Below, one piece after another: positions 2,401 through 5,400 of a stretch of 64,000 bases of DNA. The position numbers were made by a program, and so were the translations under genes. Source of the stretch: Euprymna scolopes. Taxonomy: Eukaryota. The stretch's first letter is position 1; each line of letters opens with the position of its first letter. The stretch is from assembly GCA_053919585.1 (NCBI GenBank), contig CM132797.1. The stretch is one strand, 5' to 3'. A model generated the notes under the pieces. It worked only from the letters and a program-made list of their open reading frames with translations, was not told the origin of the DNA and made no database searches.

Positions 2401-5400
2401 TCACATTTTTTCCATGAACAAAAGTACAATGTCAGGCAATTTCGCAGGAAATTTTGTATGTCTTTTTGTGATTGTATTGTCACTGATTTCTTCCCAAACG
2501 TTATTTTCATTTTTGATCAAAGCAGTGTAATGTCCTGCTCTAGCAGTTGGTCCTCTATGAATGACAGCAGCTTTCAGAGAAAAATTATTGCCAAAGATTT
2601 GCTGCTTCTTTGAACTGAAGTTCATTACGTCACAATTGATTCTTTCTTCAATATTAATATTTAGATTGGTTAAAAATCTATTGATTTGAATAATAAGATA
2701 TTTGAATTCAGGTGGGAATTCAATTCTTGAAGTAACTTCATGTTCTGAATTGAGAGAACATGTATCACAATTTTTCAGAAGAGAACTTTTCATAATTTGA
2801 TTAATTAAAAATTTGAATTGCTGAGGAGCATTATTTGGTTGCAATAGCAATTCTTCTTTTCCATCAATTGGAAGTTGCACTTGTCTCCCACAACCAGGAC
2901 TTATGTTGCAGTTGCAAATTTCATTTGTAAAATAGTTGCAATTTTGTTGATGCAATCTAATGCATCTGGCAGTATCAAATTTGGCAAAGATAAATTTTTG
3001 TTGAAAGTCCCTTTCAAAATTAAGATACATTTCTTTCCAAAATTCATGAGCACATTGTTGATTTCCATCATTGAATCTTCCACCAATAATTCTTTTCAAA
3101 TTTGCAACAGAATTTTGATTATGATAAAAAATATTTTTCATTTCTTTTGAAAATTCATTATCAATGCTCAAGCTATTCAAATAATCATGGAAATCAGTCA
3201 ACTGATTAACTAATTGCACAATTGAATTAACAAAACAATCATTGCTTCTATTGATCAAAGGCATTTTAGAAACCAAATTTGTCAAATTATTTTGAGTTTT
3301 CTTCTTTTTAGTAGTTGGTTCTTCTATTTGTCCCATTTGCAATCGCTTGGTTCTTTTCTTTGGCATATAAGTAGCATTTGCCATACACGGTGGTTGTTTT
3401 CTACAAGGTGGCAATAGAGTCAATTCTGGCCTTCCAGAACTAGCCCTCAATCTGCTGTATTCTTCCCAAGCAGACTTGTCACACATAATTAATGATCTTG
3501 GATCAAAGTCAGACAAATAAACATTGCACAATTTTCTAGCTCTTGAAAGAGCCACATAAGCCATTCCATCAGCAAAAACTTGAGTTCCCAAATCAGCAAT
3601 AATGCCATCCACACTCATTCCTTGAGATTTGTGAATGGTAATGGCATAAGAGAGTGACAATGGGAATTGATTTCTGGTAATAAATATGCCAGGTGAAATT
3701 TCATAATTAGCTTGAATTTTTTTAACAGTAAAAGGTTCATTTTTATGATCAAATTGAACCACAATGGATTCAACATTAGTGCCTTTACCAATAATATCAG
3801 TTACTTTTCCAATAACACCATTGCAATAACCTTTTTCTACATCAATGTTTCTCTTCAACATCACTTGGGCACCAATGCCAACTTTCAAAATAGTTTCTAA
3901 TCCAGCTGTTTCTGATGTTTTCTTTGGTTCATTATTTTTAATTGAAACTTTTTTCTTCTTTTTTACATTCTTTTGTCTCATTCCAGAATCAATAGCTGCA
4001 ATTTCAATAGTTTTAGTGCTGTATTTTTTTAGCATTTCATTATTTAATTCATCTACAGCTTCATTCATAGGAAGTATGCAAACAAATTTCAATTCAGAAT
4101 TGGAAGACAATTCAATAAGTTTATCTGCAATTTCTTCAACTTTTGCTTTTCTACCAGAAAATAAGCATCTTTGTTTAAGAGTGCTTATATCTGAGTCAGA
4201 GGGTGAACCAATTCTAATTCTCCCCAAGATTTCACTATAATTGTCTTTGTCATCTTTTTGTCTCATATTAATAATGAGCTCATCATATTCAAAATATTTC
4301 CATAATGAGTGTCCACAAATGCCAATTTCTGTTTTTTTGGCATCAAATGTTGTAACTCTTGCAAAAACTGGCTTTTCATTGACTGGTGGCAGTTGCAATA
4401 AGTCTCCAAACAATAAAATGTTCATGTTTCCAAATGGATATGTCATTTTATTTGAATTCCCAAAGATTTCATCCAATCTTTTGTGAATGAAAGCCAGCAT
4501 TAAATGACTGACCATGCTAATTTCATCAATTATTATTATTCTAGCATTTTCCAGAATTCTTCTAAAAAATTTGACATCATCTTTTTTCAATTCTTTGTAA
4601 ACAGGAAATTTTCCATGTTGAACACTGATCATGAGAGTGCTATGCAAAGTGTTGCCTTTTATTTGAAAAGCACTCATACCAGTTGGTCCACAAATTATAA
4701 CTGGCATGGTATCTTTGACATTAACCATTAAAGTAATTTTGTCAGAAATGGTGTCAATCAAAAAGCTTTTTCCTGTTCCACCAACACCAGAAATGAATTT
4801 GAGTAGTTGTTTACAGTCTTCACAACTGCATCTAGGAATAGGTTTTTCTTTATTGCAATGAAGTTCTTGTTTTTTAATTATACTAATAACATTATCATAA
4901 ATTCTTTTTTGATCAGAATTCAGTTGAGCTTCTTTTTCAGCTACTGATTCTTCTGTGACTTTTCTCTCAACAAAATCATTAACTATTAAATCATTAGTAT
5001 CAAATTCTTGCTCTTCATCAATAATTATTTTTTGTATTTCTTCAGAGCCTTCCTTTTCAACTTCAATTTCTAATTGCTTTGCCAACTCTATAGATTGTAT
5101 GACTTTTTTCTTTATATTTTCATAGTTAATCATTTCAGGTAATTCAGAAGAAAAATATTTAAAAGCTTCTTCATATGTTGTGAAACCATTTAATAAATCA
5201 TCTTCTTCCTTTCTCCAAGGTTTGAAAAGCATAAGCAAATTGTGAACATATCTTTCTTTGGTTTCTTTATTTAAAGGAACATATGGGGCCTTGACGACTT
5301 TTTCCTTGACTTGCTTAAAGTAACCTTTGTCATTTATCATTTTCATTTTCTTAGCTTCTTCATTGTTAGAAGGTTTAACAGATATTTTTTTATAATTGCT

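What the first reader, a model, noticed from the sequence alone, without database searches (positions are those of the whole stretch)
2401..3265. Helitron transposase fused in frame to a USP/C19 deubiquitinase-like domain
Seen: after the last Pif1 motif (YVALSR) and a basic linker, the same ORF continues ~290 aa with the USP boxes in order. These are the Cys box LINRSNDCFVNSIVQ, a QQCAHEF (QQDAxEF) box, Cys pairs of a finger subdomain and the His box FSLKAAVIHRG..AGHYTALIK..W..ISD. Known: Helentrons typically end in an AP endonuclease, and OTU-type proteases are the accessory proteases I associate with the group. Inference: here a USP with intact-looking Cys/His/Asp sits in the endonuclease position, so this lineage may deubiquitinate its own transposase or chromatin/repair factors. 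I cannot confirm the architecture is undescribed.
Basis: partly seen in the sequence, partly recalled or inferred. Interest (0 to 1): 0.8.

Follow-up and report, generated by a model that had tools for sequence, protein, structure and literature searches.

The report
Helitron transposase with built-in USP deubiquitinase
A rolling-circle transposon (Helitron-like element, group HLE2) in this invertebrate genome encodes its Rep-helicase transposase fused in one reading frame to a real USP-type deubiquitinase domain. The feature is genuine and conserved, but a 2024 survey already listed it, so this is a new member of a known kind.

Summary
The minus-strand ORF 2401-6099 (1232 aa) runs from the Rep Y-motif through a Pif1 helicase and a basic linker into a Pfam UCH/USP domain (PF00443, E 1.4e-19, 71 bits against a cut-off of 23.9). 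The Cys box, His box, Asp and zinc-finger cysteines are all present. An AlphaFold model (pLDDT 89.6) matches solved USP structures (TM 0.70-0.74).

The fusion is not a one-off:
- Colinear DUF6570-Rep-Pif1-USP proteins exist in a beetle (Anthonomus grandis, 1996 aa) and in another assembly (2160 aa, one ORF).
- At least 14 distinct protein clusters join a helicase tail to a USP domain.
- 13 of the 14 helicase-linked USPs form one clade (SH-aLRT 96).
- dN/dS against a sister subfamily is 0.26 for the USP part and 0.05 for the helicase tail.

The window copy itself is dead. It has three frame-breaking deletions and an 87-nt deletion relative to the dominant form seen in four sequencing runs.

The novelty claim fails. 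HELIANO (NAR 2024, PMC11417382) already lists UCH as a domain stably carried by HLE2 elements. New here are the invertebrate hosts, the in-frame fusion and the evidence of selection. The scan also noted this architecture on another piece of this genome (s1-247329, unchecked). Deubiquitinase activity and its target remain untested.

The parts
2455..3258 (-). USP (Pfam UCH, peptidase C19) catalytic domain, aa 948-1215 of the ORF. Residues: oxyanion Asn950 (3250-3252), catalytic Cys955 (3235-3237), His1190 (2530-2532), Asp1207 (2479-2481). Zinc-finger cysteines lie at aa 1044-1071 and 1111-1114.
   Evidence: Pfam E 1.4e-19. Alignment A1 shows these residues are at least 90% conserved. The AF2 model has pLDDT 89.6. 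Foldseek matches USP14/35/46/12/21 with TM 0.70-0.74.
3259..3516 (-). Linker between helicase and USP. It includes a basic stretch that looks like a bipartite nuclear localisation signal, KKRTKR-x11-KKKK (aa 914-934, 3298-3360).
   Evidence: Sequence read directly. The nuclear localisation role is inference. dN/dS of the linker is 0.27.
3517..4800 (-). Pif1-type SF1 helicase: PIF1 at aa 434-620, Pif1_2B at aa 738-768, UvrD_C_2 at aa 817-861. Walker A is GVGGTGKS (4765-4788), Walker B is IIIDEISM (4513-4536), and the last motif is YVALSR (3541-3558).
   Evidence: Pfam PIF1 E 2.1e-25; motif positions.
2401..6099 (-). Longest open frame of this copy (1232 aa plus stop): C-terminal part of Rep (Y-motif YVTSYQTK at 5743-5766), then helicase, linker and USP.
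6084..8288 (-). N-terminal half of the same transposase, split over three other frames in this copy: 8288-7053 (DUF6570 start), 7069-6311 (DUF6570 end and Helitron_like_N start), 6344-6027 (Helitron_like_N end with the HUH motif HVHMKIW).
   Evidence: Pfam; three-frame translation; colinear tblastn match to P0056 aa 174-2157.
5871..7098 (-). Four places where this copy is shorter than the dominant form in public runs: 87 nt at 5871/5872, 7 nt at 6083, 1 nt at 6314, 5 nt at 7098. The last three coincide with the three frame breaks.
   Evidence: read laying on 4 runs. The frame arithmetic 2->1->2->0 is my own reasoning.
2336..2400 (-). Short 3' untranslated stretch after the stop codon. It abuts an (ATT)n run at 2300-2335, which is the tail of a plus-strand non-LTR retrotransposon fragment (696-2335). 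The true 3' end of the Helitron was not determined.
   Evidence: Sequence; ORFs with RT/RNase H-like text.

Best explanation
This is a slightly decayed copy of a recently active HLE2 (Helitron2-like, endonuclease-less) rolling-circle transposon. Its single large protein has the order DUF6570, Rep (HUH/Y), Pif1 helicase, basic linker, USP deubiquitinase.

Shown: the USP domain is a true member of the USP family with a complete catalytic apparatus. It is translated in frame with the transposase. It belongs to a clade of USP domains that travel with HLE2 transposases in molluscs, insects and nematodes. It has evolved under purifying selection.

Inferred: the domain is an active ubiquitin isopeptidase tethered to the transposase. 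The linker probably brings the protein into the nucleus. Once there, the domain would strip ubiquitin from the transposase itself or from proteins at the transposition site. The transposase is large, foreign and covalently joined to DNA through a phosphotyrosine during nicking, so it resembles a DNA-protein crosslink, a lesion that cells mark with ubiquitin for proteolysis. Removing ubiquitin would therefore protect the transposition intermediate from proteasomal or repair-coupled destruction. This is the role proposed for the OTU and VTD deubiquitinases of Helentrons, filled here by a third deubiquitinase class.
For: - Pfam UCH E 1.4e-19, in the same ORF as PIF1 E 2.1e-25.
- Catalytic Cys, His, Asp, oxyanion Asn and the Zn-finger Cys are at least 90% conserved or invariant among 27 USP domains, 14 of them helicase-linked.
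- The AF2 model has pLDDT 89.6 and pTM 0.87. All top Foldseek matches are USP catalytic domains, with E down to 8.7e-19.
- The profile of A1 against PDB gives USP12/46 as best hits, E 4.5e-45.
- The same four-domain order occurs in P0056 (2160 aa, one ORF on L001) and P0155 (Anthonomus grandis). P0056 is colinear with the window element over aa 174-2157.
- 13 of 14 helicase-linked USPs fall in one clade with SH-aLRT 96.
- dN/dS against the sister subfamily L002 is 0.26 for USP (48 synonymous and 72 nonsynonymous differences over 129 and 579 sites) and 0.05 for the helicase tail.
- In four runs the dominant form carries +5, +1 and +7 nt exactly at the three frame breaks, giving a continuous frame of about 1995 codons. 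There is no indel in the USP part.
- HELIANO reports UCH as stably carried by HLE2.
- Helitron VTD domains are proven K48/K63 deubiquitinases (PMC9741609).
Against: - No activity assay exists for any Helitron USP.
- The QQD box reads QQC in this lineage, and there is a lineage-specific Cys-rich insertion of about 25 aa in the fingers. The effect of either on activity is unknown.
- The USP part is clearly less constrained than the helicase (0.26 against 0.05).
- The target of the enzyme and the link to DNA-protein crosslinks are pure inference.
- This copy is dead. Its differences from the dominant form are 7 synonymous to 33 nonsynonymous, which looks neutral.
- Transcription is only suggested by contigs in RNA libraries, which can contain DNA.
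Confidence: 0.7

Rival explanations
1. The USP domain is a passively captured host gene fragment with no role for the element. Helitrons are known for gene capture.
For: HELIANO itself interprets the accessory domains as ancient gene captures. The USP part evolves about five times faster at nonsynonymous sites than the helicase.
Against: A useless passenger would not keep its reading frame and catalytic triad while sequence identity falls to 25-30%, across mollusc, beetle and nematode elements. Nor would it form one clade with the transposases or show dN/dS of 0.26.
Confidence: 0.05
2. The domain is a catalytically silent or weak USP fold that serves as a ubiquitin- or Ubl-binding module, for example to dock the transposase on ubiquitinated chromatin, PCNA or the proteasome, rather than as an enzyme. 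Alternatively it acts on a ubiquitin-like modifier other than ubiquitin.
For: The closest solved folds include USP14, USP12 and USP46, which are nearly inactive without a partner, and USP18, an ISG15-specific enzyme. The QQD box is altered to QQC and the fingers carry an insertion.
Against: Cys, His, Asp and the oxyanion Asn are conserved in at least 90% of the aligned domains. A pure binding module is not expected to keep them.
Confidence: 0.15
3. The USP acts as a processing protease that cuts the roughly 2000-aa transposase polyprotein, as papain-like proteases of RNA viruses cut at LxGG.
For: The protein is very long and multi-domain. Another first-stage note (s1-279947, unchecked) points to a 2A-like motif upstream, which hints at polyprotein logic.
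Against: No LxGG or RGG motif occurs in the 1232-aa ORF. No ubiquitin-like domain was found by Pfam in any part. USPs need a folded ubiquitin for recognition.
Confidence: 0.03
4. The locus is a domesticated host gene derived from a Helitron, not a transposon copy.
For: Predicted RefSeq 'genes' with this architecture exist.
Against: This copy has three frameshifts and an in-frame 87-nt deletion. It lies between retrotransposon fragments and a satellite. Near-identical copies at high k-mer depth are present in many runs. Another copy was noted elsewhere in the genome.
Confidence: 0.02

Closest known systems
UCH-carrying HLE2 Helitron-like elements, subgroups c and d of HELIANO (Li et al., Nucleic Acids Res 2024, PMC11417382)
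   Same: HLE2 transposase with the DUF6570 marker, no AP endonuclease, and a Pfam UCH domain stably associated with RepHel at a conserved position.
   Different: The paper drew these subgroups mostly from lungfish and axolotl, and placed UCH among the domains 'encoded in different ORFs'. Here, and in 14 protein clusters, the USP is in the same ORF as the helicase. The hosts are invertebrates: mollusc-type runs, Octopus, Anthonomus and Bursaphelenchus. Placement of this element in subgroup c or d was not tested.
Helentron-encoded VTD and OTU deubiquitinase domains (Erven et al., Nat Commun 2022, PMC9741609)
   Same: Cysteine deubiquitinase domains inside the RepHel open reading frame of HLE2-type elements, with catalytic residues kept in autonomous copies. 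The VTDs were shown to cleave K48, K63 and K11 chains. The likely biological role is the same.
   Different: The fold and family differ: USP/C19 here, against the mirror-image papain fold of VTD and against OTU. VTD-bearing elements additionally carry a C-terminal AP-type endonuclease, whereas here the USP is C-terminal, in the position the endonuclease occupies there. No biochemical data exist for the USP type.
Cellular USP deubiquitinases, nearest solved USP12/USP46, USP2, USP14, USP35, USP21 and USP36
   Same: USP catalytic core with Cys box, QQD-type box, Zn-ribbon fingers and His box. Profile E 4.5e-45 to USP12; TM 0.70-0.74.
   Different: Only 14-18% identical. There are no accessory cellular domains. 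The domain is fused to a transposase, reads QQC instead of QQD, and has a Cys-rich insertion in the fingers of the mollusc lineage.
Helinoto, a Helitron2 of the icefish Chionodraco hamatus with three deubiquitinase-like domains (Capriglione et al. 2014, PubMed 25178533; known to me by title only, from the reference lists)
   Same: A Helitron2-type element reported to carry deubiquitinase-like domains.
   Different: The paper could not be read, so the class of its domains (USP, OTU or VTD) and their position are unknown to me.

Membership tests
USP / peptidase C19 (Pfam UCH PF00443) | Profile match above the curated threshold over the whole catalytic core | tested here: met
   71.1 bits against a cut-off of 23.9, E 1.4e-19, profile positions 3-240 of 254.
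USP / peptidase C19 (Pfam UCH PF00443) | Cys box with nucleophile Cys and oxyanion Asn; His box with catalytic His followed by Asp/Asn | tested here: met
   N950, C955, H1190 and D1207 align to columns that are at least 90% conserved in A1.
USP / peptidase C19 (Pfam UCH PF00443) | Palm-thumb-fingers fold | tested here: met
   AF2 pLDDT 89.6, pTM 0.87. All 50 listed Foldseek matches are USP catalytic domains, TM 0.63-0.74. The geometry of the triad could not be measured because the tool returns no coordinates.
USP / peptidase C19 (Pfam UCH PF00443) | Hydrolysis of ubiquitin isopeptide or C-terminal bonds | not testable with these tools
   Needs Ub-AMC, Ub-PA or di-ubiquitin assays.
Helitron-like element, group HLE2 | Rep with HUH and two-tyrosine motifs, followed by a Pif1-type helicase in one protein | tested here: met
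   Helitron_like_N E 7.9e-13 and 1.2e-10, HVHMKIW, YVTSYQTK, PIF1 E 2.1e-25. In this copy the frame is broken three times. The dominant form in four runs has indels that restore one frame.
Helitron-like element, group HLE2 | DUF6570 N-terminal domain, proposed by HELIANO as the HLE2 marker | tested here: met
   PF20209 E 3.1e-10 and 3.2e-05 in the two upstream ORFs; marker statement in PMC11417382.
Helitron-like element, group HLE2 | HLE2 termini (subterminal inverted repeats, insertion between T and T) | tested here: inconclusive
   No convincing terminal inverted repeat was found. The 3' side abuts a retrotransposon tail about 60 nt after the stop, and the 5' side is interrupted by a non-LTR fragment.
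Helentron in the strict sense | C-terminal AP endonuclease (Exo_endo_phos) domain | tested here: not met
   No such Pfam hit in any part. The ORF ends 17 aa after the USP domain.
HELIANO HLE2 subgroups c/d (UCH-bearing) | Phylogenetic placement of RepHel within subgroups c/d | not tested
   The HELIANO sequence set was not available (no supplements held).

The most novel reading that the evidence does not exclude
USP-bearing HLE2 elements are a third, independent recruitment of a deubiquitinase by rolling-circle transposons, after OTU and VTD. In these elements the enzyme is always translated as the C-terminal domain of the transposase, and it is required to shield the covalent transposase-DNA intermediate from ubiquitin-dependent destruction. 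This would mean that ubiquitin-dependent restriction is a general host barrier to Helitron transposition.
Probability: 0.3. Interest if true: 0.55.

Novelty: new member of a known kind. Interest (0 to 1): 0.3.

Why it matters
Helitrons have now been found with three unrelated deubiquitinase folds: OTU, VTD and USP. Convergence of this kind suggests that removing ubiquitin is important for rolling-circle transposition in animals. This locus and its relatives give a clean, intron-free, in-frame USP example with an intact catalytic apparatus and measurable purifying selection. The domain could be expressed and assayed directly. The practical gain is modest. This work extends the host range of UCH-bearing HLE2 to invertebrates and corrects the impression that the UCH sits in a separate ORF. 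It does not reveal a new kind of element.

Tried and rejected
- The word-indexed protein search restricted to the USP region found nothing. The exhaustive representative search was needed instead.
- One Pfam call exceeded the residue limit and was repeated with fewer proteins.
- The search for terminal inverted repeats to define the element's ends gave only low-complexity or weak pairs.
- The comparison of the window copy with the dominant form was meant as a selection test. It gave 7 synonymous to 33 nonsynonymous changes, which means neutral decay of a dead copy, so it says nothing about selection on the family. The sister subfamily L002 was used instead.
- The Helinoto paper (PubMed 25178533) and the HELIANO supplements could not be read.
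- Other papers that mention both Helitron and deubiquitinase were irrelevant.
- A processing-protease role was considered. No LxGG or RGG site was found.
- The host organism could not be named. Run labels are coded, and the only plain labels are 'mollusc metagenome' and 'invertebrate metagenome'.

Full report
**What is at the coordinates**

The finding lies on the minus strand. ORF 2401-6099 encodes 1232 aa. Pfam finds these domains in it:
- PIF1 (E 2.1e-25, aa 434-620)
- Pif1_2B
- UvrD_C_2 (aa 817-861)
- UCH/PF00443 (aa 948-1215, window 2455-3258). E is 2.9e-18 in the whole ORF and 1.4e-19 (71.1 bits, cut-off 23.9) for the last 299 aa alone.

- Cys box LINRSNDCFVNSIVQ, with nucleophile C955 and oxyanion N950
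- QQCAHEF
- the cysteine pairs of the fingers
- His box with H1190
- WEEISDN with D1207

Sequence search of solved structures returns only USPs among significant hits (USP36 best). A profile of 27 related domains gives USP12/USP46 at E 4.5e-45. An AlphaFold2 model built on that alignment has mean pLDDT 89.6 and pTM 0.87. All 50 listed Foldseek matches in the PDB are USP catalytic domains, including USP14, USP35, USP46, USP12, USP21, USP18 and USP2, with E down to 8.7e-19 and TM 0.63-0.74.

**The rest of the element**

Upstream on the same strand, three ORFs in other frames carry the rest of a Helitron-type transposase:
- 8288-7053: start of DUF6570
- 7069-6311: end of DUF6570 and start of Helitron_like_N
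- 6344-6027: end of Helitron_like_N, with the HUH motif HVHMKIW

The Y-motif YVTSYQTK is in the long ORF. HELIANO proposes DUF6570 as the marker of group HLE2. No AP endonuclease is present, and the ORF ends 17 residues after the USP domain. The element is therefore HLE2/Helitron2-like and not a Helentron in the strict sense.

About 60 nt after the stop codon the sequence meets an (ATT)n run, which is the tail of a plus-strand non-LTR retrotransposon fragment. On the 5' side another non-LTR fragment interrupts the region. The ends of the element could not be defined.

**State of this copy**

I laid contigs of four public runs on 2300-8290. The runs were two DNA libraries, one probable RNA library, and one oligo-dT RNA library labelled mollusc metagenome.
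- All four show one dominant form that differs from the window by about 1%.
- That form carries extra letters exactly at the three frame breaks: +5 at 7098, +1 at 6314 and +7 at 6083. It also has an 87-nt block at 5871/5872.
- Counting frames, these three indels take the reading frame from 2 to 1 to 2 to 0. These are the frames of the four window ORFs.
- The dominant form therefore reads through from DUF6570 to the end of the USP, about 1995 codons.
- No splice-like joint was seen.
- The USP part has no indel and eight substitutions.
- Of the 40 listed substitutions, 7 are synonymous and 33 nonsynonymous. Most are C or G in the dominant form and T or A in the window.

This is the pattern of neutral decay. 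The window holds a young, dead copy of a recently active family. Contigs in RNA libraries suggest transcription but do not prove it.

**Whether the fusion is a one-off**

It is not. The exhaustive search with the 299-aa USP part found 302 proteins at E up to 0.001. Among the best 150:
- At least 14 clusters also match the window's helicase region upstream of the USP in the same predicted protein.
- P0056 (2160 aa, a single ORF on a 7.5-kb contig of GCA_013332675.1) has DUF6570, Helitron_like_N, PIF1 and UCH in that order. It is colinear with the window element over its aa 174-2157.
- P0155 from the beetle Anthonomus grandis (XP_050314924.1, 1996 aa) has the same four domains.
- P0048 from the nematode Bursaphelenchus xylophilus holds three Pif1-USP units.
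- P0002 from Octopus bimaculoides is the nearest named relative, at 35% identity.

In a maximum-likelihood tree of 102 USP domains, 13 of the 14 helicase-linked ones fall in one clade of 28 with SH-aLRT 96. The other clade members are mostly fragments too short to judge. In the alignment of 27 domains, the catalytic Cys, His, Asp, the oxyanion Asn and the QQ box Gln are at least 90% conserved, and three finger cysteines are invariant.

**Selection**

A Logan contig (L002, which encodes P0001) is a sister subfamily, 85% identical in DNA. Nei-Gojobori estimates in the window's frame are:

| Region | dN/dS |
|---|---|
| Helicase tail | 0.05 |
| Linker | 0.27 |
| USP domain | 0.26 |

For the USP domain, dS is 0.52 and dN is 0.14, from 48 synonymous and 72 nonsynonymous differences over 129 and 579 sites. 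Both copies are themselves decayed, which inflates the ratio. The USP has therefore been under purifying selection in the transposing lineage, though it is less constrained than the helicase.

**What is already known**

HELIANO (Li et al., NAR 2024, PMC11417382) lists UCH among 20 domains stably included in Helitron-like elements. It finds UCH almost exclusively in HLE2 and enriched in subgroups c and d, and says those two subgroups came mostly from lungfish and axolotl. The paper names DUF6570, Herpes_Helicase, Herpes_teg_N and UvrD_C_2 as sharing the ORF with RepHel. It says the other domains are in different ORFs. The data here show that the USP shares the ORF.

Erven et al. (Nat Commun 2022, PMC9741609) showed that VTD domains inside Helentron ORFs are active K48/K63/K11 deubiquitinases. 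They noted OTU domains as alternatives, and proposed that these domains prevent degradation of proteins needed for transposition. A 2014 paper on Helinoto, a fish Helitron2 with three deubiquitinase-like domains, is known to me by title only. No paper in the library characterises a Helitron USP. An earlier first-stage note of this scan reports the same architecture on another piece of this genome (s1-247329). I could not check it.

**Mechanism**

Shown: a complete USP catalytic domain is translated as the C-terminal domain of an HLE2 transposase, and it is conserved as such.

Inferred:
- The basic linker (KKRTKR-x11-KKKK) acts as a nuclear localisation signal.
- The tethered enzyme removes ubiquitin from the transposase or from neighbouring proteins.
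- HUH transposases become covalently attached to DNA. Such adducts resemble DNA-protein crosslinks, which cells mark with ubiquitin. A cis-acting deubiquitinase would protect the intermediate. This is my hypothesis and is not tested.

I considered and ranked lower four rival readings: a passive passenger, a silent binding module or a protease for another modifier, a polyprotein-processing protease, and a domesticated gene.

**Verdict**

The feature is real and well supported. The fusion is ancient and under selection. It is a new member of a kind already catalogued, with modest additions: invertebrate hosts, in-frame fusion and evidence of selection. Interest 0.3.

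Noticed in passing
window 31155-64000: A satellite of about 1598-bp units, at least 20 head-to-tail copies 97-98% alike, runs to the end of the window. Part of the unit is 71% like 13124-13634 (opposite strand) and 89% like 30739-30981.
   Followed up: partly
window 5871/5872, 6083, 6314, 7098: This copy lacks 87, 7, 1 and 5 nt that the dominant form in four public runs has. The last three are the frame breaks of the transposase.
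   Followed up: yes
runs X1, X2, X4, X13 laid on window 2300-8290: Runs labelled as different organisms (A, B, mollusc metagenome) show the identical set of differences from the window copy. The same master copy, about 99% like the window, is therefore present under several organism labels. This could mean closely related taxa, mislabelling or recent spread.
   Followed up: no
P0137 (ENA contig, 1320 aa): The protein has a weak Pif1_2B match, a Macro domain (PF01661, E 5.2e-30) and a C-terminal UCH domain, that is, a Macro-USP pair behind a possible helicase tail. It lies outside the Helitron-USP clade in the tree.
   Followed up: no
P0003, P0004, P0012, P0014, P0017, P0019: These proteins carry 2 to 10 tandem USP domains and no helicase, several of them from teleost fish (Scatophagus argus, Xyrichtys novacula). 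They form their own strongly supported clade.
   Followed up: no
P0048, Bursaphelenchus xylophilus CAD5233236.1: One 3746-aa gene model contains three repeats of Pif1 helicase plus USP. It is probably tandem Helitron copies merged by annotation.
   Followed up: no
window 8316-8777 (-): A lysine-rich ORF (8319-8777) is in the same frame as the DUF6570 ORF (7056-8315), separated by a single stop codon at 8316-8318. The transposase may start further upstream in intact copies.
   Followed up: no
window 2887-2970 (-) and 3040-3060 (-): The mollusc lineage (window, P0001, Octopus P0002) shares a Cys-rich insertion of about 25 aa in the USP fingers. It also reads QQC instead of the usual QQD box. Model confidence is lower in the insertion, 73-77.
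   Followed up: partly
window 696-2335 (+), 9706-11086 (-), 15869-17473 (+): Fragments of non-LTR retrotransposons (RT and RNase H-like ORFs) flank and interrupt the Helitron region. The first ends in an (ATT)n tail that abuts the Helitron 3' side.
   Followed up: no
window 18211-18347: A run of 137 N (assembly gap or masked). Left untouched.
   Followed up: no
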